This document shows, piece by piece, positions 48,597-64,000 of a stretch of DNA of 64,000 nucleotides (its first letter is position 1; each line of letters opens with the position of its first letter). The notes beneath the pieces are model-generated. The model was not told the origin of the DNA. It worked only from the letters and a program-made list of their open reading frames with translations, and searched no databases. A program made the translations under genes and the position numbers. The DNA comes from Epithemia pelagica (taxonomy: Eukaryota > Protista > Bacillariophyta): positions 2,790,001-2,854,000 of the forward strand of contig OX337237.1 of the NCBI GenBank assembly GCA_946965045.2, in the 5' to 3' direction.

Positions 48597-49189
48597 TGTC
48601 GTCGCTCTTGTTTCTTCTGTCGCTCCCTTACAAACCAACCTATTAGGTAGGTTCTCTTTCTCTTTGTTTCCTTGCTGTTGTCGTTGTTGTTACTCTTGGT
48701 TCAGGGATGCGTCACTGGTTGTGTGTGTTTCCCAGGAGACGAACAATACCTAGAGAGCAGGGGAGGAGAGAGAGTCGAGAACAGGGGCATCGAGAGGAAG
48801 ATCTCGAGAGAACAATTGAATAGTGCGCCATTGTGGCCAACATTTTTCGGCGTCCAGCAGCTGTTGGCAGATGGGTCGCGTTTCTGTCACGATGCTATGT
48901 TTGCTATGTGTGGGTGGATGGACCCTACTCCTATCTCTACCATGTACGGCGATTCGTCCTTGCCGAGAAAGGATGTCTCATGGAATCGGTGACATGACCA
49001 GGAAAAGTCATTCTTGTTACAATCTCCGATCTAGAGAGACAAAGTGCGCTGAAAGAGGAAAGGGGGTGTCTATACTACTAGAGGTCCTTGGACGTACACT
49101 AGTGCACAAGAGAGAAAAAGAGAGAGCTTGTGGTTTTGTTCCCTTTTCATTCGTCTCCAAGAAACGAGCCCGGAGAAGAACTACATTGA

Positions 49190-50092
49190 TTGACGTTCTC
49201 CAGCGGTAAGAATAGATGAAAGAATTGTTGGACCATCTCCCGATGATGGGATCCTGGCTTGATCCGGCTGGATAAAACGCCGATCGTCCCCTCCACGGTT
49301 GGCGTCAGCCCTGTTCTTGTTGTCGTCGTCGGATGGAGTTGTGGTGTATTTGGTCATCATGGCTGCCACTACTTCTTGGCCACGATTTTCCCATTCCTCC
49401 CGATTCTTTTGGGCATAACCCAAGTATTCGTCACTCGATACCCCAAAGACACCACAATCACTGAACTTTTTGGCCAATGGAATAATATAAAAGTAAAAAA
49501 AGCCCAGTTCACCCTGGTACCAAAACTCGGACGGATCCTTTTCCGCTCGTCCGTGTTGGTAGGCCGTGTACAGTTCCAGGAACAATCGTTCGTTCCATTT
49601 TCGAAAAATGTGCCAATGCTGCATGGTATGAGCCACATCGGAGGCCTGAATCAAGTGCTCAATCACAATGGTCGCCTTGCGATTGGTATTGTGGACCTGT
49701 GTGGTGGCATCCATATTACGAATCGTAGTATGGTTGTTGTCTTGGGAAAAGGCCTTGTCCCACCGTTGATTGCGCAATTGCTTGAGATCCTTGTCCATAA
49801 TATCCGTTGCCATGACTCCTGCGTGTGTGCGTAGTTGGAAACACCATGCATGAGACAAGACAAAAGTGTCAGAAGTGGTTTTGCATGGCTCAAGAAAGGG
49901 AAATATAGATCGATCTGGACAGCAACACCCCACAAGAACACGTACCATTGACCACCAGTTCGCGGAACCGAGCCATTTCCGCCTCCGTGCTGCAAATAAC
50001 ATTGCGGAGATCATCGAATTGGTCTTCCATCAAAAGATGCCACGACAAGTCGACCGAATTCTGTTCGGCCAAACTCTTGCCATTGTATTTGC
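49190..50092 (-). pseudogene. 3' stub (PDE C-terminal part) of a cyclase-PDE paralogue; intron 49819-49945
   Basis: KYNGKSLAEQNSVDLSW...RELVVNG|VMATD...IQASDVAHTMQHW is near-identical to 31653-32520, with the intron in the same position. Similarity ends near 50092. Confidence 0.9.
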
Positions 50093-50596: not shown

Positions 50597-53500
50597 ATGG
50601 AAGCAGTAGCTGCAGCCGCAACAACCTCATCGGACGACCACGTGGCAGTCTCAATGAGAACGAACGAACCAAGCCAAAACGAACCAAGCCTGGCGGAGGA
50701 TTCTAACACCACCAACAACGACGACAACTCGAACCGCAAGGACCAGGACTCCAATCTGGAACTAGACAAACAGGAGGGGATCCTTCCAGTTTCGCCACAT
50801 TCTCAGCCAGGAATGAGCACCCCGAATTCCTCTGTGAATTCCTTCCAGGCCAAAGCAGCATCTTTTCCAGTCGAGGTGGATGACAGGCAGAGGGACGATT
50901 CGAACCAACCAGAGGACGTGAAGAACGAGAACGAAGCACCATCCAGCATTCGTAGCCACCAGACCAACGAATCGTCGTCTGCGGCATCCACTCCGGATAC
51001 GAACAGCAGCAGCAGCAGTAGGAAAGTCTCCTCCATGCCAATCGCCAAGGAGGAATGTTTCCGAAAACAAGAGAATCTGGACGACAACAGTGAGGCATTG
51101 CATGGCAACAACTCACCCCGAAACAACCAGAACGAACCGACCAGTCATGTTCCTCTCCCGGTAGCCGCCATGAATGCCAATCCTCCTATGCCATCTTCCC
51201 CATCAGTAGACACCCTTGCGCTGACCGTGTTCGATGGGACACGAGAGGAAGATACCATTCTCACACCGACGACTGCTCCTCCTACTACGAATACTACAAC
51301 TCCTCCTCCTCTTTCACCACCAACACTTACGACTACCCTGGTCCTCGATTCGGACGGCATGACGAGTCAAAGTAGCGTGCATCGAAACAACAGCTACAAC
51401 AAGAACTACAAGAACAAAAAGCCCTTGACCGCACAAGGCTTTTTGCGAGCCTTGGAATTGGAAGATGAAATCCTCTTGTCCGACTATGTCTTGTTGCCTC
51501 AAGATGATCCTCGTCGTCATTCGACGGACTATAGCGGGGAAGATTGTTTCTTGTCGCATCGCGGACCGGATACCAAACGCGATTTGGTGGTACCCTTGGC
51601 CCGTACCTTGACCAATCTCTATGGCTATCGTTTGTTTGTCGATGCCCAAGCCGTGAATGAGCATGCGCGAGGATCCGGTCACTTGCCCAAACGCGATGTC
51701 TTACGGCATGCCTTGTGGAAATGTCAAAGCATGCTCATTTTGATTTCGCGAACCTTTGATCAGTCCTCCTGGTGTTTGCGAGAATTGTATACCGCCCTCT
51801 ATCGGCGTCGCGGTGATTCCGACTTTGAATTGTGCATCTTGTGGTGCGATGGCTTGACACCGGAATTGGGCAATCATTTGCCCGCCTATGCCGGATTGCA
51901 ATTGCATCGGTATCATCCAGCACCTCCCCACCAAGGAGGAGAAGAAGAGTCGAACGGTGCAACCGCCGTAGCCTCGTATCAGCCCTATACGACCTTGGAA
52001 GGCTTTGCCGTCGATTGTTTGCATCCAGTGGTTCGACACTTGATCTCTGGTCCTACGGCACCACTTGTATCCCAGGCCATTTTTACCGAAACCTGGCGAT
52101 GGTATTGTCCACTCAAACCACCCACGACACATCCAGGGCCACCGCCACCATCCGTACTAGCAACAAGATTGCAATCGAATGGGACACCATTATCCACAAC
52201 AACAACAGACGTAGTCCTGAGCAACGACCCCAACACTCCTCCATTCACTCGTACCAATAAGGATGCGGAAGTGGCCTCGAACGACAACGACGTTACTAGC
52301 CACAAGAACAACACGAATCAAGAACAACAACAGCCACGGGCAGAAGATGTCGAAGTGGGCAGTAGCAGCACCAGCCGGAGTAGTCCAAGTCATGATGACA
52401 ACCAAGACAAATCCAAGAAACCACCCAGCTTGCTATCCTCGTGGAACCGCAACCCGACCCTCCGGTACACCTTCTGGATTCTGATACTCTTGATTCTCCT
52501 TTGTGGAGTGGGTATTATCGTGGCGGTGGTGCTTCGAAATACCAAGGACGACGACGACAACAACAACAACACGAATGGACAAAGTGCTTCGTTGGATTCC
52601 CCCTCGTCTTCCACAACGAGTAACCCTTCTGTGCCTCCCACCTTGTCTCCATCGACACTCTCACCCACGACTGCCTTTCCCACACGAGTCCCTACCCCGA
52701 CACCCAGTGGTGCACCGAGTACATCCACGGCTCCTTCGATGGATCCACGAAAGGTGGTCTTGGTGGAATTTTTGCGGAATCAAACTCGGGTCGAAACTCC
52801 GTTGCAATATCCTGCCCAAGATCTCTCCACCTCTTCCATTGAAGAACTCGCCTTGACATGGCTGGTCGATGAAGATTCACTCGCGCTCGAAGTCAATGAT
52901 GCCTCGTCGCAACGACGTATTGTACAACGGTATGCGTTGGCAACACTCTGGTTTCTCCAAACACCCGAAACAACCTGGAGACAAGTGAATCAAATCAATT
53001 GGTTGTCGGCGGCACACGAATGCGAGTGGGCCATGGTTACCTGTCGAAACACGACAATTACGAATGATAATGGCGAAGAGGTTGGAATGGATCTTGTGGT
53101 GGATCAATTGGCTCTCGGCCGTCTCAAATTGACGGGTACCATTTCGGAAGATGTGGGACTCTTGACGGATGTTACATCTTTGGAGTTGACTGGCAATTCC
53201 TTGATTGGACCGTTTCCACCTCTTGTGTTGCAAATGACATCTCTCACCGTGCTACGACTGGATGGCAATGCCTTGACTGGTCCCATTCCCAATGAATTGG
53301 GCACCACGTTGACGCAATTGCAAGACTTGAGACTTTGGAACAATTTGTTGACGGGTACCCTGCCGAGTAGTATTGGCGAATTATCTCGTTTGACCTACTT
53401 GGATACAGGCAACAATCCGAGTTTGGGAGGTGTCTTGCCCACAACCTTGACGCAGTTGACAGCCCTGGAATCCATGCGATTGTGGATCAACAACTTTACG

Positions 53501-54091
53501 GGTCCTATTCCGGAAAATATCGGGGACCTCGAAGCATTGGAGTCACTCCTCCTGTCGAACAATGACTTGACGGGAACTCTGCCGAGTAGTTTTGGTCTAT
53601 TGAGTAATTTGGTCGTCTTTTATGCCGGATTCAATCCTCAATTGGGTGGTCCCCTTCCCAATGTTACGTTGTTGACATCGCTCACCCACCTGTGGTTGGA
53701 AGATACGGATTTTACTGGACCCATTCCCGAAGATGTGGGTGGCATGAGCAGTTTGCAATATTTAATCTTGACCAATAATCGCTTGTCGGGTACGATTCCC
53801 ACCAGTATTGGTCAACTTTCCAATCTCCTTCAATTTCGAGTGCTTCTAAATCCCGAATTGCGAGGTCCTATACCAAGTTCCATGGCCGATTTGACCAAAC
53901 TGAGTCTTTTTAACATTCACAATACCTCCTTGACAGGTGAGGTTCCCTTGTGCTCGGTGGTAGACTCACGATCCTATAGCATTGTGGCAGCCGATTGCGA
54001 CCAAGTCAATTGTACCTGTTGTACTCAGTGTTGTGACAGAGTAACGGGATCCGAGGACTCTCTCTTTAGAAGTGTCTGTGCTTTGCAATAA
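50597..54091 (+). CDS. TIR-TM-LRR receptor 1 (1164 aa)
   Basis: TIR EDCFLSHRGPDTKRD...SWCLRELYTALYR; TM at ~52472-52534; S/T/P stalk; QRYALATLWF and WLS..HECEW.VTC cap; ~12 plant-type LRRs; C-cap CDQVNCTCCTQC. Confidence 0.92.
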   Translation: MEAVAAAATTSSDDHVAVSMRTNEPSQNEPSLAEDSNTTNNDDNSNRKDQDSNLELDKQEGILPVSPHSQPGMSTPNSSVNSFQAKAASFPVEVDDRQRDDSNQPEDVKNENEAPSSIRSHQTNESSSAASTPDTNSSSSSRKVSSMPIAKEECFRKQENLDDNSEALHGNNSPRNNQNEPTSHVPLPVAAMNANPPMPSSPSVDTLALTVFDGTREEDTILTPTTAPPTTNTTTPPPLSPPTLTTTLVLDSDGMTSQSSVHRNNSYNKNYKNKKPLTAQGFLRALELEDEILLSDYVLLPQDDPRRHSTDYSGEDCFLSHRGPDTKRDLVVPLARTLTNLYGYRLFVDAQAVNEHARGSGHLPKRDVLRHALWKCQSMLILISRTFDQSSWCLRELYTALYRRRGDSDFELCILWCDGLTPELGNHLPAYAGLQLHRYHPAPPHQGGEEESNGATAVASYQPYTTLEGFAVDCLHPVVRHLISGPTAPLVSQAIFTETWRWYCPLKPPTTHPGPPPPSVLATRLQSNGTPLSTTTTDVVLSNDPNTPPFTRTNKDAEVASNDNDVTSHKNNTNQEQQQPRAEDVEVGSSSTSRSSPSHDDNQDKSKKPPSLLSSWNRNPTLRYTFWILILLILLCGVGIIVAVVLRNTKDDDDNNNNTNGQSASLDSPSSSTTSNPSVPPTLSPSTLSPTTAFPTRVPTPTPSGAPSTSTAPSMDPRKVVLVEFLRNQTRVETPLQYPAQDLSTSSIEELALTWLVDEDSLALEVNDASSQRRIVQRYALATLWFLQTPETTWRQVNQINWLSAAHECEWAMVTCRNTTITNDNGEEVGMDLVVDQLALGRLKLTGTISEDVGLLTDVTSLELTGNSLIGPFPPLVLQMTSLTVLRLDGNALTGPIPNELGTTLTQLQDLRLWNNLLTGTLPSSIGELSRLTYLDTGNNPSLGGVLPTTLTQLTALESMRLWINNFTGPIPENIGDLEALESLLLSNNDLTGTLPSSFGLLSNLVVFYAGFNPQLGGPLPNVTLLTSLTHLWLEDTDFTGPIPEDVGGMSSLQYLILTNNRLSGTIPTSIGQLSNLLQFRVLLNPELRGPIPSSMADLTKLSLFNIHNTSLTGEVPLCSVVDSRSYSIVAADCDQVNCTCCTQCCDRVTGSEDSLFRSVCALQ

Positions 54092-54984
54092 GTAGAAGAG
54101 CCAAAACATCCAGAAGAGGTCGACCGAGGTGAAACGTTATGGAAGCAACGGATATAATAACGAGAGACCACACGGGTTTAATTCAGCACAAGCAGGAACA
54201 TAATCCACATGGCGTAAAGGATCAGGAATTTGAGCCACGAAGCATATCTCATGTTGGCTGTGTATCATGTCTTGTTGCCTTTCATCAAATCAAGGCTGTC
54301 AAATCGGCAAATCCGAAACGCAATGGAAAAGCCACGAGCCTCCAGCCCACAGATCGACGTGAAATGCATCCAAAATATTGGTATCAGGTGTATTGCATAT
54401 TGCATCACGCAGTAGGGAAACGATAGACTCTACCCAAGAAACCATGTCGTCTAAGTTTTGCACTCTTTCGATGGGTTGCTGTCATATGTTATTAAAGACA
54501 AGACGCACGGAAGGGAGATGCACTTTCTGGTGATCTTCTCTTGGACTCATTTTACGTGAACGCGACTGACGGATTGCGCGGGTGTTTGGTTCTTCTCACA
54601 GGCGCATGGAGGACCTCGCTTCACAGTGGCTGTACACGCACAGTTTGTATGCTCTCCGAAGCTTGTTAGCACACCGCCAAGTTTGCTTCGATCTTGCTGT
54701 TCCTTTTCCTTTTGTGGTTGCTTAGACCACAACTTTATGCTCTGTTGTGGCTCAGGCCTGCAGTGTCAAGGTTTACGCTCGCTTTCGGCTGACAGAACAA
54801 AAGCACGTAGCACAGGTAGAGAACCCGGAGGTTTGCGTGAATGCATTGCTCGCGATCTTCTTTGGGAACGCGACTTGGAAATTGTAGGATATGATGATCC
54901 ATGTTCACATGTTTCTGTCTTCTCATTTCCCTTTTGAGACAATTCACTACGACACTCGATTGTTCTATCCTGACGTTCTACATC

Positions 54985-57597
54985 ATGGAGAACGAGGCAC
55001 AAGTACGATCTCAGAATACTAGCAATGACTGGTATCACGACAAGGATGACCACGACAACGGGATTAACCGTATGCAGTCATCGTCGGATTCTTTGACCGG
55101 TGAAAACTTCTTGCGAGCCATGGAATCGGAAGATACAACGCTTCTGTCTCGCTTTATTTTCCCCAAAGAACAAGAAGATGTTGATGACGAGTATCCAGGC
55201 GAAGATTGCTTTCTGTCGCACCGCGGACCCGATACGAAACGTGACTTGGTGATTCCATTGGCCCGTTCCCTCAAAGAATTGTACGGTTATCGCTTCTTTC
55301 TAGACGCCGAGCCAGTCAATGAACACTCTCGAGCGTCCGGTCATCGCAACAAAACGGACGTGCTTCGACAGGCTTTGTGGAAATGCCGCGTCTTGTGGAA
55401 ATGCCGCGTCTTTGTGGTGTTCTTGTCTCGTGAGTTTCACAAATCCAAATGGTGTCTGAAGGAATTGTATACAGCCCTTTACCGGCATCGAGGCAAAGAC
55501 AACCATGACTTTTTGGTGCGCATGGTCTTTTGTGAAGGTATGGATCCTGACATTTGCGATGTCATGCCTGCCTATGCCGGTTTGAAATTGGGACAAACGT
55601 TTGGCACGTTGTACAAACCCTATACGACATTGGAAGGCTTTGTGGTTCATTGTTTGCATCCCACGATACGACAACTTTTGTCAGGAAACAATGCCTCTAT
55701 GGTACCCGACAGTGTATTCACCGAAAAATGGAGGATACATTGTCCCCTCAAACCTCCCAAGTACCTCGAAACAGTGCCCTCAAATTTGGACGAGGAATCG
55801 TATCCCTCAAGGCCAAGTAACATGGAGCACCGCTTTTTTGATGAGGCCACTCAAGAGGGTCCATATGATTCAGACATGAATATTCCCTGGCATTCGACCC
55901 GGAACGAGATCCATGCGAAGTTTAATGCAGAGAGCAGTGAGAAAGACGAACCCAATGGATCTAATGTCGTTTCAGTATGCTCCTGGGCAAGCACACGGAC
56001 TGTCTCGGTCTTAGTTGCGTCTTTTGCCCTTATCCCTTTCGGTGCGATTGTGATTGGTATACTGGTCCCCTTCAACCGTTCCGTCGATGATGACACCCAA
56101 ACCTCGTTGCGTCCAGCAACAAGCATAACTCCCACTCAATCACCATCCCATGTCAGTTCTTTGCCTTCCTCGTTGCCCTCGTCATTTCCCAGCTCCACTC
56201 CGACCGAAACTCCATCTCCGACCGAAGACCCTCGCACAATGGATATTTTAACGTTGATCCAGAGCCACACGCTAGTGCAACCTTTGGCACTTCGTTATCC
56301 TCTCAATCTTGATGAACACTCCTCGGCAACACCAGAAGAAAAAGCATTGACATGGTTAATTGATGAAGATCTGGCGAAATTGGGAGTCCAAACTCCGTCG
56401 GGGCAGCTTCGAACCTTGCAACGGTACGCTCTGGCGACTCTTTGGTTCCTGCAAACACCAGAGAGGCCTTGGAAAGAAAAAGACCAAGTTAACTGGTTAA
56501 GCGAAGCTAATGAGTGTGATTGGGCCATGGTCACCTGTCGAGAAAAGATGACAATGACAAATGCCCAAGGAAGTAGCAACGATACTGAACGAGTCGTAGA
56601 CCGACTGGGAGTGACAGCCCAGAAGCTACAAGGCCCGCCTCCCCAGGATTTGGGCCTGTTGTCGAACTTGAGTTGGTTGGATTTGAAAGGGAATGAACTC
56701 TCGGGATCCTTTCCCAGTTTTATTTTACGGTTGACTGGTTTGGCCTTTTTGGACTTGGCTGGTAATCAATTCACGGGACCAATTCCGGACGAGATTGGAA
56801 CCTTGACTCAGTTACAAGAACTTCGGCTGTGGAGCAATTCTTTTACAGGAACTGTTCCCCCTACCATTGGTGAGCTTTCTAATCTGTTTTATATCAACGT
56901 TGGCACCAATCCTAGCTTGGGAGGCCATTTACCAAGTTCGGTGACGAAATGCACTATGCTTAAAGAAATGGTCTTGTGGTTCAGCAATTTCACTGGACCC
57001 ATTCCAGACGACATTGGCAACTTGGTCGAATTGGGAAACCTACTTCTTTCGGGAAATTCGCTATCGGGCACGATTCCTGACAGTTTCGATCAACTGGTGA
57101 ATCTCGTAGTCTTCATGGCCGAAGGTAATGGCAATTTGGGAGGTCCCCTGCCTAGTAATCTCCCTGAGTTGTCACGGCTAAGCCACGTGTGGTTAGAGGG
57201 CAATCGTTTTACAGGAACAATCCCCAACGGCATTGGACGGTTAACCAACTTGAAGTTTTGGATGTTGCAAAACAATTTGTTGAAGGGTACAATTCCGAGC
57301 AGTGTTGGTCAACTTTCCCAACTATTCGAATGGGACGTTGGTAACAATCCTGGACTGTGGGGCCCCATTCCTACGTCCTTGTCGGACTTGGAAGACTGGC
57401 GTATCTTTAATATCCACTCGACATCCTTGACGGGAAAGGTGCCTCTATGCGGTGTTTATGGGCAACGTCAATACACAACAGTGGCGGCGGATTGTAACAA
57501 AGTCCAGTGTCCTTGTTGCACCCACTGCTGTGACGGTGTGCCAGGCACAAAGTCTCATGGAATCATGTTTGTGGCAAAGTTGAGGACTGAAGAATAA
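54985..57597 (+). CDS. TIR-TM-LRR receptor 2
   Basis: Same architecture. TIR at ~55201, KWCLKEL, TM at ~56002-56073, ~12 LRRs, C-cap CNKVQCPCCTHC. ATG 54985 preferred over the track start 54901. Confidence 0.92.
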   Translation: MENEAQVRSQNTSNDWYHDKDDHDNGINRMQSSSDSLTGENFLRAMESEDTTLLSRFIFPKEQEDVDDEYPGEDCFLSHRGPDTKRDLVIPLARSLKELYGYRFFLDAEPVNEHSRASGHRNKTDVLRQALWKCRVLWKCRVFVVFLSREFHKSKWCLKELYTALYRHRGKDNHDFLVRMVFCEGMDPDICDVMPAYAGLKLGQTFGTLYKPYTTLEGFVVHCLHPTIRQLLSGNNASMVPDSVFTEKWRIHCPLKPPKYLETVPSNLDEESYPSRPSNMEHRFFDEATQEGPYDSDMNIPWHSTRNEIHAKFNAESSEKDEPNGSNVVSVCSWASTRTVSVLVASFALIPFGAIVIGILVPFNRSVDDDTQTSLRPATSITPTQSPSHVSSLPSSLPSSFPSSTPTETPSPTEDPRTMDILTLIQSHTLVQPLALRYPLNLDEHSSATPEEKALTWLIDEDLAKLGVQTPSGQLRTLQRYALATLWFLQTPERPWKEKDQVNWLSEANECDWAMVTCREKMTMTNAQGSSNDTERVVDRLGVTAQKLQGPPPQDLGLLSNLSWLDLKGNELSGSFPSFILRLTGLAFLDLAGNQFTGPIPDEIGTLTQLQELRLWSNSFTGTVPPTIGELSNLFYINVGTNPSLGGHLPSSVTKCTMLKEMVLWFSNFTGPIPDDIGNLVELGNLLLSGNSLSGTIPDSFDQLVNLVVFMAEGNGNLGGPLPSNLPELSRLSHVWLEGNRFTGTIPNGIGRLTNLKFWMLQNNLLKGTIPSSVGQLSQLFEWDVGNNPGLWGPIPTSLSDLEDWRIFNIHSTSLTGKVPLCGVYGQRQYTTVAADCNKVQCPCCTHCCDGVPGTKSHGIMFVAKLRTEE

Positions 57598-58123
57598 TGG
57601 ACTGTCTTTGTCTGATGAGGTCTGTTGAAAAATGGAGTGAACCAAATGACAAATCGTGAGGGACATACGGACACCCACCGAGAGAACCAGGATAATGCTA
57701 TCATAAGAGTCGACGACATGAATCTAAGGCGAGAAGAAAACTCAAGGAGTACGGAATGACATGAGATTCATTCCTTTTAGGACTGATACTCTTCTAGCTT
57801 AGAGGTGGTTTTCCTGCTACTCCTGTGCGACGAAAGTCATTGGTTGTGTAGATGGAGTGCCGCTCGTGCAGAGACAGCCTGCCTACCTAATTTACATGGA
57901 TAGTCCGAGGATACTTTCTACCAATCAAAAGTATCCATTAGAAACACGTCACTGATCTTTGCATTGGTTCTGGAGATGGAGTGCCGCTCGGAATTGACGT
58001 GACAGAGAGCTTGCGACTTGCGACTCGCAACATACCCGTAGACTCATGTGCAGAGGATTTGTCAACGACAGCAACGACAGGCAAAAGATCTACAATCTAC
58101 CTCAGTAGAGCCGTCATCCACGC

Positions 58124-61100
58124 ATGGATAGAACGATGGATGAACCTTTCAGAGATGGTGAGGGAGTGGAGGAAGGGGAAACTCCTTCTTCGTGGAACGC
58201 GGAAATGAGGGCCAAGGTGGAAGAGGAGGAGAAGAGCGATACAACGGAACATGAAACAGATCACAGAGACATGCAAGAAACTGGTAGTCGTCGAAACTCT
58301 AGTACGAAGAAGAACGATAAGGCGAGGCACGCTTCCTGCCAACCAAAAGGGGAGGAAGACAAATTCGATGAGATTTGGGCTAACAGCAACTCGAACAGCG
58401 ACCTTTTGGAGGAACCGCTTGAATTTCCTTCCACGGTGGTAGTGGATCATCATCAGGCCAGCAAGTACTCAACAAGCCTGACAGGCGAAAATTTTCTACG
58501 TGCCCTGGAAGCGGAAAATCAAGACCTGTTGTCACATTTTATTTATTTCCAACAACAAGCCTCGACGGCTGACCCTAAACAATTTCAGTACGATTGTTTC
58601 ATGTCCCATTTGGACCAAGATACGCAACGAGATTTGGTAGCACCTCTGGCAGAAACCATGCAAGAGATTTATGGATTTCATAGTTTTGTGGACTCGGACA
58701 ACAATCCAAAAGGTGATGTGAAGAGTCCAAACGAAAACAAGGACAGCTCACGGACCATCACTGCCTTGTGGACATGTCGTGTTGTCTTGGTGTTTTTGTC
58801 GCGTGAATTTCACAAATCCAATCGTTGCTTGAAGGAGTTGTATACAGCCTTGTATCGACGCCGCGATCCCTCCCAAGACTTTATCATGCGTATCGTATTT
58901 TGCGATGGCATGGATCCAGGTTTGTGTGACAGTTTGCCAGCGTATGCTGGATTGGATGTGGGTGACACCTTTGGTACCCTGTATCGACCCTACATGACCT
59001 TGGAACAATTTTGTGTCGAATGTATGCATCCCACTATGCGACAATTATTGTCGGGCAATGACGCAACCATTGTCCCCGATGGCATCTTTTTACAACACTG
59101 GAGACGGAATTGTCCTCTCAAACCGCCTCGGTATCTAGTGGAGTCGTCTGCTGCTACCAATCCCACCAAGACGAGTACTCCAACGTCTGCTTTATCTATG
59201 GATATTGCCCATGAGGAGAGTCTTTCCGTTCGCAATCCAAAAGACGTCCTTGTGTCGTCCCTGAAATACAGCTCCAAGCCTCAACAGTCGAAACAGCTCA
59301 AGGAACCGATGAAGGATTCGTCTCGAGGCATGACGAGATCCTCTATCACTCTGAGTCGTGATGACCTGGAGGTTGCTAGCACACCACTACAGCATGACCC
59401 GACACTTTCGAAGAAGGACATTCCAAAACCACAAGCCACAACAGGATTCTTCACTAGGAGAAAAGTAGTTGTATTCGGTTCTGTGATTGGTCTGGTGATT
59501 CTGGTGGTAGCGATTGTCGCTGCAGTGGTGACCACCCGATCCCCCGACACGACCACGTCGTCCGCTTTCAAAGAAGAGCAAGTTGCTCCTTCTCCTTTGC
59601 CCACAACGGCTCCAGTCGCATCCAGGAGTGCTCCCACCCCCGTTTCACCCTCATCACCACCTACGACGCCACCTCCAACGCCGCTACCGACGAGTCCTCC
59701 ATCCCAATTCATGGCTCCTACCACCAGCCCTCGAATCGTCCAGGTGGTCTCCTTTTTACAGAGTGTAACACTTACCACCTCAACCTTGCGCTATCCAGTC
59801 TTTGGACCATCCGCCACACTGGAAGAAAAGGCCTTGGCGTGGATTTTGGACACGGATCCTGCCCAATTAGGAGTAGAAACCGATGCGGAGCAACGACGAC
59901 TGGTACAACGATATGCCCTGGCAACCTTGTGGTTTTTGCAAAACACCACGGAGGCGCTGTGGGAACCAGACGCTCAACAAGGTTGGTTGACGGCGGCACA
60001 CGAATGCGACTGGGCCATGATCACCTGTGAAGACGTGCGGTATTTGGAGGGCATTGGCAATACCATTATTACCGAACGGTTTGTTGACGCGCTGGTAGCT
60101 GTAGGAAAGAATATTCAAGGGCAGCCCTCCAATGATTTGGGACTCTTGACTCGTTTGACAGAATTACTTTTGAGTGAAAATGCTTTGACCGGTCCCTTCC
60201 CTGTGGGCCTGACGCACTTGACGGCACTTAAAGTCTTGGAGTTGGATCAGAATGAGATACAAGGGCCCATTCCCAGCCAGATTGGAGAATTGACGGACCT
60301 GGTTGAATTGAGAGCCTGGAGCAATCTCTTGTCAGGACGAGTTCCCTATAGTTTTCGGCGTTTGTCCAAGCTAACGACATTGGATTTGGATGACAACGAA
60401 ATTTCAGGTACCTTTCCTTCGGCGCTCACGAGTTTGACCAATCTACGATTTTTGGAATTGGACAACAATGCCTTTTCGGGAACCATCCCTGATAGCTTTA
60501 TTTCGCCCTTGTCTAATCTCCGCTTGCTCGAGTTGGATGGCAATCAGTTTTCGGGGCCGCTCCCAACAACACTATCGGGATTGATACAGCTGAATACTTT
60601 GTATTTGCACGACAACCGATTCACCGGTTCTATACCAGAGGATATTGGCCGTTTGACCAATATGATACGTCTTGCCTTTCAGCAAAACCGATTCACTACC
60701 TTTCTTCCGAGCAGCGTTGGTGACATGGTCAAATTGACTTACTTGAGCTGTCATTCCTGCAGACTATCAGGGTCTATTCCCGGTACATTATCAAACTTGA
60801 CCGATCTGAACACACTCGACCTTTCGTTGAATGATTTGACAGGGACCGTGTTTAGTGGCTTGAGCGAATTGTCCAATCTAGAGGTGTTCAGCATTAGTCG
60901 CAATCCAGATTTGGGTGGAACCATTCCCAGCGAAATCGCCGACTTTCCTCAACTAACACGGTTGTATGCCTATGCGACCAATATATCGGGTGATATTCCA
61001 CTTTGTTTGAACACAAACAGAACCTATGAATATATTGTGGCCGATTGTGAAGAAGTTTCTTGTCCCTGTTGCACCCATTGTTGCCCCGCATTTGGTGATA

Positions 61101-61132
61101 TTCCCTCCTTTGGAAATTCAAACTGCCTGTGA
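58124..61132 (+). CDS. TIR-TM-LRR receptor 3 (1002 aa)
   Basis: TIR YDCFMSHLDQDTQRD...NRCLKEL; TM at ~59465-59533; ~13 LRRs; C-cap CEEVSCPCCTHCC. Confidence 0.92.
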   Translation: MDRTMDEPFRDGEGVEEGETPSSWNAEMRAKVEEEEKSDTTEHETDHRDMQETGSRRNSSTKKNDKARHASCQPKGEEDKFDEIWANSNSNSDLLEEPLEFPSTVVVDHHQASKYSTSLTGENFLRALEAENQDLLSHFIYFQQQASTADPKQFQYDCFMSHLDQDTQRDLVAPLAETMQEIYGFHSFVDSDNNPKGDVKSPNENKDSSRTITALWTCRVVLVFLSREFHKSNRCLKELYTALYRRRDPSQDFIMRIVFCDGMDPGLCDSLPAYAGLDVGDTFGTLYRPYMTLEQFCVECMHPTMRQLLSGNDATIVPDGIFLQHWRRNCPLKPPRYLVESSAATNPTKTSTPTSALSMDIAHEESLSVRNPKDVLVSSLKYSSKPQQSKQLKEPMKDSSRGMTRSSITLSRDDLEVASTPLQHDPTLSKKDIPKPQATTGFFTRRKVVVFGSVIGLVILVVAIVAAVVTTRSPDTTTSSAFKEEQVAPSPLPTTAPVASRSAPTPVSPSSPPTTPPPTPLPTSPPSQFMAPTTSPRIVQVVSFLQSVTLTTSTLRYPVFGPSATLEEKALAWILDTDPAQLGVETDAEQRRLVQRYALATLWFLQNTTEALWEPDAQQGWLTAAHECDWAMITCEDVRYLEGIGNTIITERFVDALVAVGKNIQGQPSNDLGLLTRLTELLLSENALTGPFPVGLTHLTALKVLELDQNEIQGPIPSQIGELTDLVELRAWSNLLSGRVPYSFRRLSKLTTLDLDDNEISGTFPSALTSLTNLRFLELDNNAFSGTIPDSFISPLSNLRLLELDGNQFSGPLPTTLSGLIQLNTLYLHDNRFTGSIPEDIGRLTNMIRLAFQQNRFTTFLPSSVGDMVKLTYLSCHSCRLSGSIPGTLSNLTDLNTLDLSLNDLTGTVFSGLSELSNLEVFSISRNPDLGGTIPSEIADFPQLTRLYAYATNISGDIPLCLNTNRTYEYIVADCEEVSCPCCTHCCPAFGDIPSFGNSNCL

Positions 61133-62189
61133 TTGGGTAATAGCTGCCCTTCTTTGGAAATTCTAGGCAGCTACCCATCCTTGTCGGACCCCCGACTTAT
61201 AGGCTGGGTTTCCACGAAGAATGACGAGATACGAGATGCATCTGTGTATTTGGACAACGCCAAAAAAAACAAGTCTCACAACAATTTCGAGAATTGACAC
61301 CCCACGATACGGCCCATGATTTGTTTGGACCACCACCAACAACAATAACACCAACGGCGTCCCACCGCCACAACATCAACAACAAGAGCAGTATGAGTAA
61401 ACGAATGGCAATAATCAGTCGTTTTGGTTGCACAGCCACTCCCTATGCACAAGCTTTAAAGAGCAGGGGTGGAACGTGCGGATCAATCGGGTGTTCAAGA
61501 TTTTTGTTTCGCCATGTCGACACAAGCCACCTTGGTTGATGTTCGACAGTCCACCTTTGCTCAAATGGCAGGTTTGCTGGGCAATGCCTCCACGGTCCGA
61601 TGGTATTCCGTGGACGAACGCAAAAAGCAAGAAACACAGTCCCCCCCCCCCAAAGACACTCCACCATCCGCGTCTTTCCAAAACAAGGACAACACTGCAG
61701 TCGTTGCTGCTTCTAGGAACCATGAGACCAGCAACACGTCCTCGTCCTCGTTTGGATCGCTCCAACAGCCTACCTTGCTTCCAGTGGACCCTGTTTTGAA
61801 GGTAGAACGAAAATTTTTGCAACAGCATGTTTGTCCTTCGGGATCCATGACGATCGAATCCTTGCAACAAACATCCAAGGCCTTGTTCGCATCCCACTCG
61901 GATGTGAGTCTTGAAACGAAACCTGACTCCTATCCTGTTGTTGAATGAGGGGTTGCAAGAGCTGTGGAACTAGATTCCAGCGTGTTGGTATACCAAGACT
62001 CACAGAACACACCAATTCTAAAGACTGGGAAGGATCCGATGATCGACTGGATCAATCAACAATCTTCCGATCCATGGTAAACTTTTCCGTTACTCTCATT
62101 CATGAAAATCCATCAATAGAGCCGCAGAAACACATCAACATGCACTCCAGCTCAACAACCATCAAACGAACCAACCACGAAACAAAGAA

Positions 62190-62662
62190 TGTGAGCATTC
62201 CACGTGGAATTGGTGAGCTGACGGACCCTACCTCGCTTGACTTTCCAAATCAATGGTCTTGTGGAGCCAATATTTGAGGCAATATCGAACTTTACAAAAT
62301 TGAATTTCGTGAGTTTCCGTTCCAACGTTAGGGCAACCAGTGGCAACGACTTTTCAGGTCTCATTCCTGATCACTTGCTCTCGGCCTTGAGGTTTCTGGA
62401 TTTTTCAAAAAATCAAAGGCTGGAGGGTATCATTTCAACCTTGGTTGGGAACCTTCCCGTTTTCACTGTCTTCTACGCCTGTCGCACCATCCGGACAGGC
62501 GCCATACGTCTGTCTCTGTGTGGGTCGGCAGAGGGGAGGTCTAGTTTGGTCGTTGTGGATTGCGAAAAAGTGGCGTGCCCGTGTTGCTTGTATTGCTGTC
62601 TAGCGTTTGGGGATTGTCCTGGCTTTGACTTTATCAAACTGGAGTACATTACTTACTTCTGA
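62190..62662 (+). pseudogene. Decayed LRR/C-cap remnant of the same receptor family
   Basis: IPRGIGELTD, then in another frame ISNFTKL...NDFSGLIP...LRFLDFSKNQRLEG...VVVDCEKVACPCCLYCC. Confidence 0.75.
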
Positions 62663-63142
62663 ACCTTTTGTGAGCGGCAGAAGGAAACCAAAAGGGTCAG
62701 AGGTAACAACTACCACAGGTCCCAATGGTCGAGCCATGACACACAAAAGAACCTACTGGGCAAGAGAACCACACACACCACATCATACAACAGCCGTATA
62801 GTTCTCAAAACATGCAAACTGCTCTGGACTAGAAAATCTTGGAAGCATATAGTCCTCAATCTCTTGATCTGTCTTGATATGTATTGAAAATTTGCTCTGC
62901 TTTTCAATTCCCATCTTTTGTGTTGCGCGGAAAAAGCGTCACCGCGCGTACGCGTACCGCCAAGGGTGCCGTATACGCGCCCGCAGGCCCAGCACACAAA
63001 ACGCAATGCGCCAGTCGCTGTTGAATCACCGATATTATGGAAGTTGCGGTTTGCAGTCCTCTTCATCATCAATCTTCATCCCTGTCTACACGTCGATGAT
63101 GCGACGTTATTGTCAATAGCGTCGTCGATTCCGCATACCGCT

Positions 63143-64000
63143 ATGGAAAACACTCCAGATGACGAGGAACCGTCCCTTGCCCTTGAGGAGCAAATCCCCG
63201 AACATGCGGATTGTGAGTCTTTGACGGCGGCCAACTTTCTTCGTGCCATGGATTCCAACGACCCAGATGTATTGTCGAACTTTGTGTTTCTTTCCAAACA
63301 TGATCCACGGCCGGATTATAAAGGCGAAGATTGTTTCATGTCGCACAGAGGACCCGACACCAAGCGAGATTATGTTGTTCCACTGGCAAAGACATTACGA
63401 GAACTCTACGAGTTCAAGATTTTTGTAGACTGCGAACCAGTCAATGAACTTTCACGGAACGCACTGGATCTTGATAAGGGCGAGGTGATTCGGCACTCGT
63501 TATGGAAATGCCGTGTGGTTCTCGTCTTTTTGTCTCGTGATTTTCATAACTCGAAATGGTGTTTGTTGGAATTGTACACCGCATTGTATCGTCAACGAAT
63601 GGATCTTGAGAACAAAGACTTTGTTCTTCGAATCATATTTTGTGATGATATGGATCCTGACAAGTGCAACGAGATGCCTGCTTACGCTGGGTTGGATCTG
63701 GGTGGAAAACTTTGGGGTTCTTTCGGAGCCGTATACCTATCTGGAAGACTTTGCCGTGGGTTTGCATCCCATTGTACGAGAGATAATTTCGACGGATGAA
63801 GCTTCTCCTCGTTCTCCGGCATCTGAAAAAGAGTTTTTTACGAAATGGCGCCGTCACTGTCCACTCAAAGCTCAGTCCAATAATCTGAAGAATGTGAATC
63901 CCCTCCACCGGAAGCTCCTAATTCTTGGTTTTATGTTACTACTTGGCGGAATTGTGGTGGCGGCTGTGATGTTACCGGACGATCCGACTCCGTTGCCGCC
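63143..64000 (+). pseudogene. TIR-TM receptor copy 4 (5' part), with one extra A at 63706-63709 causing a frameshift; runs off the window
   Basis: EDCFMSHRGPDTKRD...KWCLLELYTALYR. After the shift: NFGVLSEPYTYLEDF...KWRRHCPLK...HRK-LLILGFMLLLGGIVVAAVML. Confidence 0.85.

What the first reader, a model, noticed from the sequence alone, without database searches (positions are those of the whole stretch)
50597..64000. Tandem array of 'inverted Toll-like' receptors: N-terminal TIR - TM - stalk - C-terminal LRR
Seen: four intronless, same-strand paralogues plus a remnant. Each has TIR near the N-terminus, one internal hydrophobic segment preceded by basic residues (RNPTLR, TRT, TRRK, HRK) and no N-terminal signal peptide. 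The three complete copies continue with an S/T/P stalk, a Cys-capped LRR ectodomain and many N-glycosylation sequons on the C-terminal side. There is no Walker A (NB-ARC/NACHT) or kinase domain. Known: animal TLRs are type I (LRR-TM-TIR), plant TNLs are cytosolic TIR-NB-LRR, and plant LRR-RKs signal through kinases. Inference: these are type II surface receptors with a cytosolic TIR, an independent assembly of TLR-like parts, possibly an innate immune or sensing system of a diatom. I cannot confirm it is undescribed without a search.
Basis: partly seen in the sequence, partly recalled or inferred. Interest (0 to 1): 0.92.

Follow-up and report, generated by a model that had tools for sequence, protein, structure and literature searches.

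The report
Diatom inverted TIR–membrane–LRR receptor gene cluster
A diatom genome carries a tandem cluster of genes for membrane proteins that put a plant-type TIR "immune enzyme" domain inside the cell and a plant-type leucine-rich-repeat sensor outside, in the opposite order to animal Toll-like receptors. I found no description of this arrangement in the papers I could search.

Summary
Window 50597-64000 (+ strand) carries three uninterrupted ORFs (1164, 898 and 1002 aa), the start of a fourth gene, and a 3' LRR/Cys-knot remnant. Each gene encodes an N-terminal TIR (Pfam PF01582 above its cut-off), one hydrophobic span, an S/T/P stalk, 11-23 plant-type 24-residue LRRs and a C-terminal Cys knot. 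None has NB-ARC, a kinase domain or a Walker A motif.

- **TIR domain.** It folds like plant NLR TIRs (RUN1, L6, RPS4, Roq1) and keeps the catalytic glutamate (CLxEL).
- **Topology.** Flank charges favour TIR-in/LRR-out in 11 of 11 family members.
- **Gene integrity.** Only copies 1 and 3 are intact in both haplotypes, and they are under purifying selection. Copy 2 has duplications inside its TIR. Copy 4 has a frameshift in the window and a premature stop in the other haplotype.
- **Beyond this genome.** Other, mostly unnamed, sequences show TIR-TM-LRR, TIR-TM-propeller-LRR and TIR-TM-DUF285; a TIR-TM-Cys-rich protein occurs in the diatom Gedaniella. The same TIR module also sits on a TPR protein of the diatom Entomoneis and on unnamed NB-ARC-TPR proteins.
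The N-glycosylation asymmetry is not supported, and "Toll-like" is loose: both domains are plant-like.
- **Earlier notes.** The scan already noted this stretch and neighbouring copies on the same genome.

Most likely these are type II surface receptors with a cytosolic TIR NADase. The function is inferred.

The parts
50597..54091 (+). Copy 1, 1164 aa: low-complexity N-terminus, TIR module, linker, TM, S/T/P stalk, helical N-cap, about 11 LRRs, Cys knot. Intact in both haplotypes.
   Evidence: ORF; Pfam TIR 35.7 bits plus LRR families; dN/dS against the L001 allele 0.36 overall, 0.13 in the ectodomain.
51425..52123 (+). Copy 1 TIR module (aa 277-509). The catalytic-type Glu is E396, in WCLREL.
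52466..52534 (+). Copy 1 transmembrane span (aa 624-646).
   Evidence: KD19 3.45; flank net charge +2 on the N side and -2 on the C side.
54901..57597 (+). Copy 2, 898-aa ORF. The likely true start is M29 at 54985. About 12 LRRs and a Cys knot. It has the highest word depth in the RNA-like run X4.
55375..55410 (+). Tandem duplication inside the copy 2 TIR. It is 18 nt and in frame here (LWKCRV twice). The other haplotype has a 19-nt version plus an 11-nt duplication near 55109, which together put the N-terminal half of the TIR out of frame.
   Evidence: blastn of window against L001; indels in run contigs.
58124..61132 (+). Copy 3, 1002 aa, intact in both haplotypes. TIR module aa 119-335 (58478-59128, E238 in RCLKEL), TM aa 448-471 (59465-59536), ectodomain from aa 535 (59726-61129) with about 12 LRRs and a Cys knot.
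   Evidence: dN/dS 0.04 in the TIR and 0.18 in the ectodomain.
62225..62662 (+). Remnant holding only the last about four LRRs and the Cys knot (39% identical to copy 3 aa 889-996). No TIR or TM is detectable upstream of it.
   Evidence: tblastn; ORF 62237-62662.
63143..64000 (+). Copy 4, 5' part. TIR with WCLLEL, a 1-nt insertion near 63706 that shifts the frame, and the TM at 63915-63974 in the shifted frame. The gene runs off the window. The other haplotype (L001 15029-18028) reads through as 999 aa with about 23 LRRs but has an in-frame stop just before the Cys knot.
   Evidence: contigs of X2-X4 show no indel relative to the window.

Best explanation
This is a birth-and-death cluster of genes for single-pass type II membrane receptors of a diatom.

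Proposed anatomy and mechanism:
- The N-terminal TIR domain stays in the cytosol.
- The internal hydrophobic span acts as a signal anchor.
- The S/T/P stalk, helical N-cap, plant-type LRR solenoid and C-terminal Cys knot face the outside, or the lumen of a secretory compartment.
- Ligand binding to the LRRs would cluster the receptors and bring the cytosolic TIR domains together.
- TIR domains that keep the plant/SARM1-type catalytic glutamate assemble their active site only when self-associated. Clustering would therefore switch on NAD+ cleavage, giving either signalling nucleotides or NAD+ depletion, and so a defence or cell-death response.

Shown here: the domain order, the TIR fold, conservation of the glutamate, a charge bias consistent with this topology, purifying selection on copies 1 and 3, and probable transcription.

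Inferred: the topology itself, the enzymatic activity, activation by clustering, and the immune role.
For: - **Domains.** Pfam finds TIR above its cut-off plus LRR families in every copy, with no other domain.
- **TIR fold.** The AF2 model of the TIR module has pLDDT 78.8. Its best solved matches are plant NLR TIRs (RUN1, RPV1, L6, RPS4, Roq1), probability 1.0. AlphaFold DB clusters agree.
- **Catalytic residue.** A family profile aligns CLkEL onto WCLMEL of the flax L6/L7 TIR domains and WCLEEL of Roq1, the motif that, from memory, holds the plant catalytic Glu. The Glu is present in all four copies.
- **Whole-protein model.** The full-length model shows a disordered N-terminus, the TIR, a disordered linker, one helix at 446-470, a disordered stalk, a helical cap, and an LRR solenoid at pLDDT about 90.
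- **Topology.** The N-side flank of the TM is more positive than the C-side flank in 11 of 11 members, including distant ones. The stalk is 30-59% S/T/P.
- **Ectodomain type.** It matches plant LRR receptor-kinase ectodomains such as GSO1, HAESA, MIK2 and FLS2.
- **Selection.** dN/dS between haplotypes is 0.04-0.32 in the TIR and 0.13-0.18 in the ectodomain, against 0.7-1.2 in the linkers.
- **Transcription.** The RNA-like run X4 covers copies 2, 3 and 4 but not the intergenic gaps, and shows no splice joints.
- **Recurrence.** The architecture recurs outside this genome in P0088, P0182, P0184 and P0167.
Against: - No dedicated topology predictor or experiment was available, so the orientation rests on the positive-inside rule and on domain logic.
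- NADase activity was not tested. A conserved Glu does not prove catalysis, and copy 3 has R in place of the W that precedes the Cys.
- Two of the four copies are damaged in one or both haplotypes.
- Whether run X4 is RNA is not on record. One X4 contig runs from copy 3 through the remnant.
- No ligand, downstream partner or induction data exist.
Confidence: 0.6

Rival explanations
1. This is a scaffold-type receptor. The topology is the same, but the TIR does not act as an enzyme. It recruits other TIR proteins by homotypic contacts, as TLRs recruit MyD88. The recruited partners would be the TIR-only, TIR-ankyrin or TIR-NB-ARC-TPR proteins that carry the same TIR module.
For: The same TIR module, including its N-terminal helix, occurs at 35-43% identity on NB-ARC-TPR, TPR, ankyrin and TIR-only proteins, one of them from the diatom Entomoneis. 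TIR-only relatives come from contigs of the same ENA sources. In the tree these modules are intermixed.
Against: The catalytic-type Glu and the adjacent Cys are kept in all copies and in distant members, which is what an enzymatic TIR would show. The best structural matches are enzymatic plant TIRs rather than TLR or MyD88 TIRs. The two modes are not mutually exclusive.
Confidence: 0.2
2. This is a non-immune surface protein. The LRR ectodomain would serve adhesion, mating, cell-cell or cell-bacteria communication, or cell-wall sensing, with the TIR as a generic signalling or death module. The cluster would reflect ordinary family expansion.
For: TIR-less type II LRR proteins with the same N-cap and Cys knot exist in other diatoms, for example Thalassiosira exigua KAL7551210.1. 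The paralogues are old, with saturated dS. No induction data are available.
Against: In characterised systems, TIR domains with the catalytic Glu act mainly in immunity or cell death (established knowledge). Presence/absence variation, pseudogenisation and tandem clustering are typical of immune receptor loci. The ectodomains are swapped among LRR, propeller, DUF285 and Cys-rich modules.
Confidence: 0.15
3. This is a decaying or non-functional array, or a gene-model artefact. On this reading the long ORFs do not give working TIR-TM-LRR proteins.
For: Copy 2 has duplications within its TIR, which scramble the frame in the other haplotype. Copy 4 has a frameshift in the window and a premature stop in L001. 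One copy is only a 3' remnant.
Against: Copies 1 and 3 are intact in both haplotypes with dN/dS well below 1 in the folded domains. The ORFs run about 3 kb uninterrupted. The same fusion is seen on contigs of 3.7-4.8 kb from other sources. There is RNA-like coverage.
Confidence: 0.05

Closest known systems
Animal Toll-like receptors (LRR - TM - TIR, type I)
   Same: Single-pass membrane protein that pairs an LRR ectodomain with Cys-containing caps and a cytosolic TIR. Activation by ectodomain-driven TIR juxtaposition is the likely shared logic.
   Different: The order and topology are reversed: the TIR is N-terminal, with a signal anchor instead of a signal peptide. The TIR is closest to plant NLR TIRs and keeps the catalytic Glu. 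The LRRs are the plant-specific 24-residue type, and no TLR appears among the top 60 solved-structure matches.
Plant TIR-NB-LRR immune receptors (RUN1, L6, RPS4, RPP1, Roq1)
   Same: N-terminal TIR of the same structural subtype with the SxWCLxEL-type motif and catalytic Glu, and LRRs at the C-terminus.
   Different: There is no NB-ARC domain. A transmembrane span and stalk lie between the TIR and the LRRs, so the LRRs are extracytosolic. In the tree the TIRs form a separate diatom clade with 100/98 support.
Plant LRR receptor kinases and receptor-like proteins (GSO1, HAESA, MIK2, FLS2, EIX1)
   Same: The ectodomain repeat type (LxxLxxLxLxxNxLxGxIP), a cap with a C.W..V.C motif, and strong sequence matches.
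   Different: Inverted topology, a TIR instead of a kinase, a helical diatom-specific N-cap, and a C-terminal DC..C.CC..CC knot at the free C-terminus.
Diatom TIR-less type II LRR proteins (e.g. Thalassiosira exigua KAL7551210.1)
   Same: An internal TM, an N-cap motif, plant-type LRRs and the same C-terminal Cys knot. This is probably the scaffold onto which the TIR was fused.
   Different: No TIR in the cytosolic N-terminal part. Soanes and Talbot 2010 (PMC2939053) reported that diatom LRR receptors had no attached functional domain.
Gephyrocapsa huxleyi membrane TIR proteins (PMC12489294)
   Same: Algal TIR proteins with the catalytic Glu, a TM helix and an extracellular region, proposed to act in antiviral sensing.
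   Different: There the extracellular region and TM precede the TIR (type I order), and the authors state that no LRR or NBS domains are attached.

Membership tests
Toll-like receptors (animal) | Type I order: signal peptide, LRR ectodomain, TM, C-terminal TIR | tested here: not met
   The TIR is N-terminal, the single TM lies downstream of it, and the LRRs are C-terminal.
Toll-like receptors (animal) | TIR of the receptor/adaptor scaffold type, closest to TLR, IL-1R or MyD88 TIRs | tested here: not met
   The top Foldseek and profile matches are plant NLR TIRs. TLR and MyD88 TIRs rank lower.
Plant TNL (TIR-NB-ARC-LRR) | Central NB-ARC NTPase with a Walker A motif | tested here: not met
   No NB-ARC hit and no Walker A motif.
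Plant TNL (TIR-NB-ARC-LRR) | N-terminal plant-type TIR with the catalytic Glu | tested here: met
Plant LRR-RLK / RLP | Plant-specific 24-residue LRR ectodomain | tested here: met
   Repeat parsing; matches to GSO1, HAESA, FLS2 and others.
Plant LRR-RLK / RLP | Type I topology with a cytosolic kinase or a short tail | tested here: not met
   No kinase domain; the LRRs are C-terminal to the TM.
Enzymatic (NAD+-cleaving) TIR domains | TIR fold | tested here: met
   AF2 model plus Foldseek, probability 1.0, TM-score by target 0.5-0.68.
Enzymatic (NAD+-cleaving) TIR domains | Catalytic glutamate at the position conserved in plant TIR NADases | tested here: met
   The profile alignment places CLxEL on L6/L7 WCLMEL and Roq1 WCLEEL. 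That this motif's Glu is the catalytic residue is from memory. E396, E188, E238 and E142 are present.
Enzymatic (NAD+-cleaving) TIR domains | Measured NAD+ hydrolase or cyclase activity | not testable with these tools
   Needs a biochemical assay.
Type II single-pass membrane protein (N-in, C-out) | No cleavable signal peptide, and one internal hydrophobic span with more positive charge on its N-side flank | tested here: met
   One peak per protein; the N flank is more positive in 11 of 11 members. No dedicated predictor or experiment was available.
Diatom type II LRR proteins with C-terminal Cys knot | Internal TM, C.W..V.C N-cap, plant-type LRRs, and a DC..C.CC..C(C) knot at the C-terminus | tested here: met
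   Shared with T. exigua KAL7551210.1, P0088 and P0182.

The most novel reading that the evidence does not exclude
Diatoms may have their own class of surface immune receptors that wire extracellular recognition directly to a cytosolic TIR NADase. These receptors would use interchangeable ectodomains (LRR, propeller+LRR, DUF285, Cys-rich) and share the TIR module with cytosolic NB-ARC-TPR (NLR-like) proteins. That would be a third, independently assembled TIR-based innate immune system beside those of animals and plants.
Probability: 0.35. Interest if true: 0.85.

Novelty: new variant of a known kind. Interest (0 to 1): 0.72.

Why it matters
Almost nothing is known about how diatoms, which are major ocean primary producers, sense bacteria, viruses and parasites. 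A 2010 survey reported that diatom LRR receptors had no attached signalling domain (PMC2939053).

This locus offers a concrete, testable candidate: a surface LRR sensor fused directly to a TIR domain of the enzymatic plant type. If the topology and NADase activity hold, two things follow. The LRR + membrane + TIR solution to pathogen sensing would have been assembled at least twice, with opposite polarity. TIR NADase signalling could also be triggered from the cell surface without an NTPase oligomerisation module.

The shared TIR module on NB-ARC-TPR proteins further points to an NLR-like arm in the same lineage.

Tried and rejected
- **Glycosylation asymmetry.** It was checked as topology evidence and is not present, so I dropped it.
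- **Word-based search with copy 2.** Beyond this species it found only plant LRR kinases and two TIR-NB-ARC-TPR proteins.
- **Search with P0182, region 1-400.** It returned only the query itself.
- **Metagenome contig scan with the TIR module profile.** It gave 131 pattern matches, none confirmed.
- **ESM Atlas feature search.** It gave only bacterial soluble TIR-LRR clusters at scores of 0.83 or less. That is below the level that means kinship, so I did not use it.
- **Rfam on 48-64 kb.** Nothing.
- **PADLOC.** Only weak ThsB/SAVED-TIR hits, which add nothing beyond "TIR".
- **tblastn of the four proteins against the whole window.** No further copies upstream of 50597.
- **Six literature searches.** No description of a TIR-TM-LRR type II receptor.
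- **First LRR-counting regex.** Its spacing was wrong. I corrected it.
- **Gene-fusion artefact.** Considered and rejected (see the rival explanations).


Full report
**1. What is in the sequence**

The + strand of 50597-64000 holds three long uninterrupted ORFs:
- copy 1, 50597-54091, 1164 aa;
- copy 2, 54901-57597, 898 aa;
- copy 3, 58124-61132, 1002 aa.

It also holds a short ORF at 62237-62662 and a fourth gene that starts at 63143 and runs off the window.

Pfam places TIR (PF01582) above its curated cut-off in all four genes, at 30.7-37.5 bits against 21.3. It finds several LRR families in the three complete copies and nothing else: no NB-ARC, NACHT or kinase. A motif scan finds no Walker A or kinase catalytic loop. 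tblastn of the four proteins against the whole window finds no other copy. It shows that the 62225-62662 piece matches only the last LRRs and the Cys knot of copy 3, at 39% identity.

**2. Anatomy**

The alignment of the copies and a full-length AF2 model of copy 3 give the same layout:
- a disordered, low-complexity N-terminus;
- a short conserved helix, then a TIR module of about 215 residues (pLDDT 70-86);
- a disordered linker;
- one long helix (aa 446-470 in copy 3);
- a disordered stalk that is 30-59% S/T/P;
- a three-helix cap carrying the QRYALATLWFL and C.W..V.C motifs;
- an LRR solenoid at pLDDT about 90;
- a terminal DC..V.C.CC..CC knot.

Repeat parsing gives about 11, 12 and 12 LRRs in copies 1-3, and about 23 in the full copy 4 of the other haplotype. 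All are of the plant-specific 24-residue type.

**3. The TIR domain**

- An AF2 model of the TIR module (pLDDT 78.8, pTM 0.81) matches solved plant NLR TIR domains best: RUN1, RPV1, L6, RPS4, RPP1 and Roq1, at probability 1.0 and TM-score by target up to 0.68. Bacterial, SARM1 and TLR/MyD88 TIRs rank lower. AlphaFold DB clusters give the same picture.
- A profile of the module, searched against PDB sequences, aligns the family's s.wCLkEL onto SKWCLMEL of the flax L6/L7 TIR domains and STWCLEEL of Roq1. From established knowledge of plant TIRs, this is the motif that carries the catalytic glutamate.
- The Glu is present in all four copies, at E396, E188, E238 and E142. Copy 3 has R in place of the preceding W.
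- What Pfam leaves unmatched after the first about 100 residues is simply the second half of the TIR fold.

**4. Topology**

- Each protein has exactly one strong hydrophobic peak and no N-terminal signal sequence. The hydrophobic start of the copy 2 ORF lies upstream of the Met that aligns with the other copies.
- I compared the 15-residue flanks of the span in 11 proteins: the four copies, two further copies from this genome, four distant relatives and a TIR-less diatom protein. The N-side flank is more positive than the C-side flank in all 11.
- Together with the stalk and the Cys-rich caps, this favours TIR in the cytosol and LRRs outside.
Sequon density is equal or lower on the C-terminal side in copies 1 and 2.
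- No dedicated topology predictor was available, so the topology remains inferred.

**5. Are the genes alive?**

A syntenic locus from another assembly, L001 (ENA ERZ21939226, 92-97% identical, so another haplotype or a close strain), allows allele comparisons.

- **Copies 1 and 3** are intact in both. dN/dS is 0.32 and 0.04 in the TIR module and 0.13 and 0.18 in the ectodomain. It is 0.7-1.2 in the linkers.
- **Copy 2** carries a tandem duplication inside the TIR. In the window it is 18 nt and in frame. In L001 it is 19 nt, with an additional 11-nt duplication upstream, and together these put the N-terminal half of the TIR out of frame. Both indels also appear in run contigs.
- **Copy 4** has a 1-nt insertion near 63706 in the window. 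Contigs of runs X2-X4 show no indel there. In L001 it has an in-frame stop just before the Cys knot.
- The paralogues are old, with saturated dS.

This is the birth-and-death pattern usual for receptor clusters.

**6. Transcription**

Four public runs of the same organism hold the locus. Three behave like genomic DNA. The fourth, X4, has word depth of 240-450 over copy 2 and about 16 over copies 3 and 4. It drops to zero in the two intergenic stretches 57800-57999 and 62859-62987. One of its contigs starts 49 nt upstream of the copy 4 ATG, it shows an adapter at 57751, and it has no splice joints.

That looks like RNA, but the library type is not on record. One X4 contig also runs from copy 3 through the remnant. 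I therefore treat transcription as probable rather than proven.

**7. Relatives**

An exhaustive HMM search of 1.84 billion representative proteins with the TIR module found only 15 proteins at or below 1e-30. Their architectures are:

| Architecture | Proteins |
|---|---|
| TIR-TM-LRR | this genome's copies; P0182 (about 16 LRRs, same caps) |
| TIR-TM-propeller-like repeats-LRR-Cys knot | P0088 |
| TIR-TM-DUF285 | P0184 |
| TIR-TM-Cys-rich | P0167; its cluster includes Gedaniella sp. CCMP2646 |
| TIR-NB-ARC-TPR | P0018, P0019, P0089 |
| TIR + TPR (no Pfam NB-ARC or TIR hit at 1e-4) | P0090, from Entomoneis paludosa |
| TIR-TPR | P0093 |
| TIR-ankyrin | P0094 |
| TIR-only | P0087, P0092 |

- More copies lie in this genome. 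A TIR-TIR gene sits about 19 kb beyond copy 4 on the opposite strand, next to a hAT transposase. P0091 lies on a contig of the same length (775,818 bp) as the one holding copy 1's protein, probably the window's own contig.
- A tree of the TIR modules separates a diatom clade from plant TNL TIRs (100/98). It groups this genome's TM-linked TIRs together (94/97). NB-ARC-TPR-linked and TM-linked modules are intermixed at deeper levels.
- The ectodomain scaffold without a TIR exists in Thalassiosira exigua.
- The simplest reading is that a mobile diatom TIR module was fused to a pre-existing type II LRR scaffold, and separately to NB-ARC-TPR proteins.

**8. Comparison with what is known**

- The ectodomain's closest solved relatives are plant LRR receptor kinases: GSO1, HAESA, MIK2, FLS2, PEPR1 and BRI1. 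No TLR appears in the top 60.
- "Inverted Toll-like" therefore describes the logic, not the ancestry. Both modules are of the plant type, and the protein fails the defining tests for TLRs, TNLs and LRR-RLKs (see the membership table).
- Six full-text searches found no description of a TIR-TM-LRR type II receptor.
- Soanes and Talbot 2010 reported that diatom LRR receptors lack attached domains.
- The closest algal case is Gephyrocapsa huxleyi. Its membrane TIR proteins have the opposite order and no LRRs.

**9. Mechanism and verdict**

The best-supported model is a type II surface receptor in which ligand-driven clustering brings cytosolic, catalytically competent TIR domains together and switches on NAD+ cleavage. 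A scaffold mode, in which the receptor recruits the TIR-only or NB-ARC-TPR relatives, is the main rival and may coexist with it.

Architecture and fold are shown. Topology is supported only indirectly. Enzymatic activity, the ligand and the immune role are inferred.

Novelty is a new variant of a known kind: a new arrangement of known immune modules. It is rare in current databases but not confined to one species. Earlier first-stage notes of this scan had already flagged the same stretch and neighbouring copies on this genome.

Noticed in passing
L002:10001-13700 (ENA ctg1359l, about 19 kb beyond copy 4, opposite strand): A further family member begins with two tandem TIR modules (P0086, 415 aa). 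It is followed by broken ORFs with LRR hits. A 1266-aa hAT-type transposase ORF lies immediately upstream (L002 5488-9288, - strand).
   Followed up: partly
window 55109 and 55392: Run contigs disagree on the 11-nt and 1-nt indels in the copy 2 TIR. X1 has only the 1-nt insertion and X2 only the 11-nt one. Several copy 2 alleles or mis-phased unitigs must therefore exist. Which allele is expressed is unresolved.
   Followed up: partly
window 60795-61440: In run X1 the summed word depth jumps to 1000-2200, against about 380 nearby. The spike covers the 3' end of copy 3 and the following intergenic stretch. It could be a repeat, a second organism or RNA-like signal. It is unexplained.
   Followed up: no
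window 45693-48638 (-) and 49181-50014 (-): The upstream neighbours are a 981-aa zf-MYND protein and a phosphodiesterase (PDEase_I-like) fragment. In L001 the cluster is followed by a 651-aa ORF without Pfam hits and a TLD-domain gene.
   Followed up: no
P0018, P0019, P0089, P0090, P0093 (not in the window): Proteins carrying this TIR module on NB-ARC and/or TPR regions (one with added MORN repeats) look like an NLR-type family. One (P0090, TIR + TPR) is from the diatom Entomoneis paludosa (MMETSP1065); the others are unnamed. I found no paper describing TIR-NB-ARC-TPR in diatoms.
   Followed up: partly
window 50597-51424: The 276-aa N/S/T/P-rich N-terminus of copy 1 evolves almost neutrally (dN/dS 0.85) and differs by a large deletion in the other haplotype (1099 vs 1164 aa). 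The true start codon of copy 1 is therefore uncertain.
   Followed up: no
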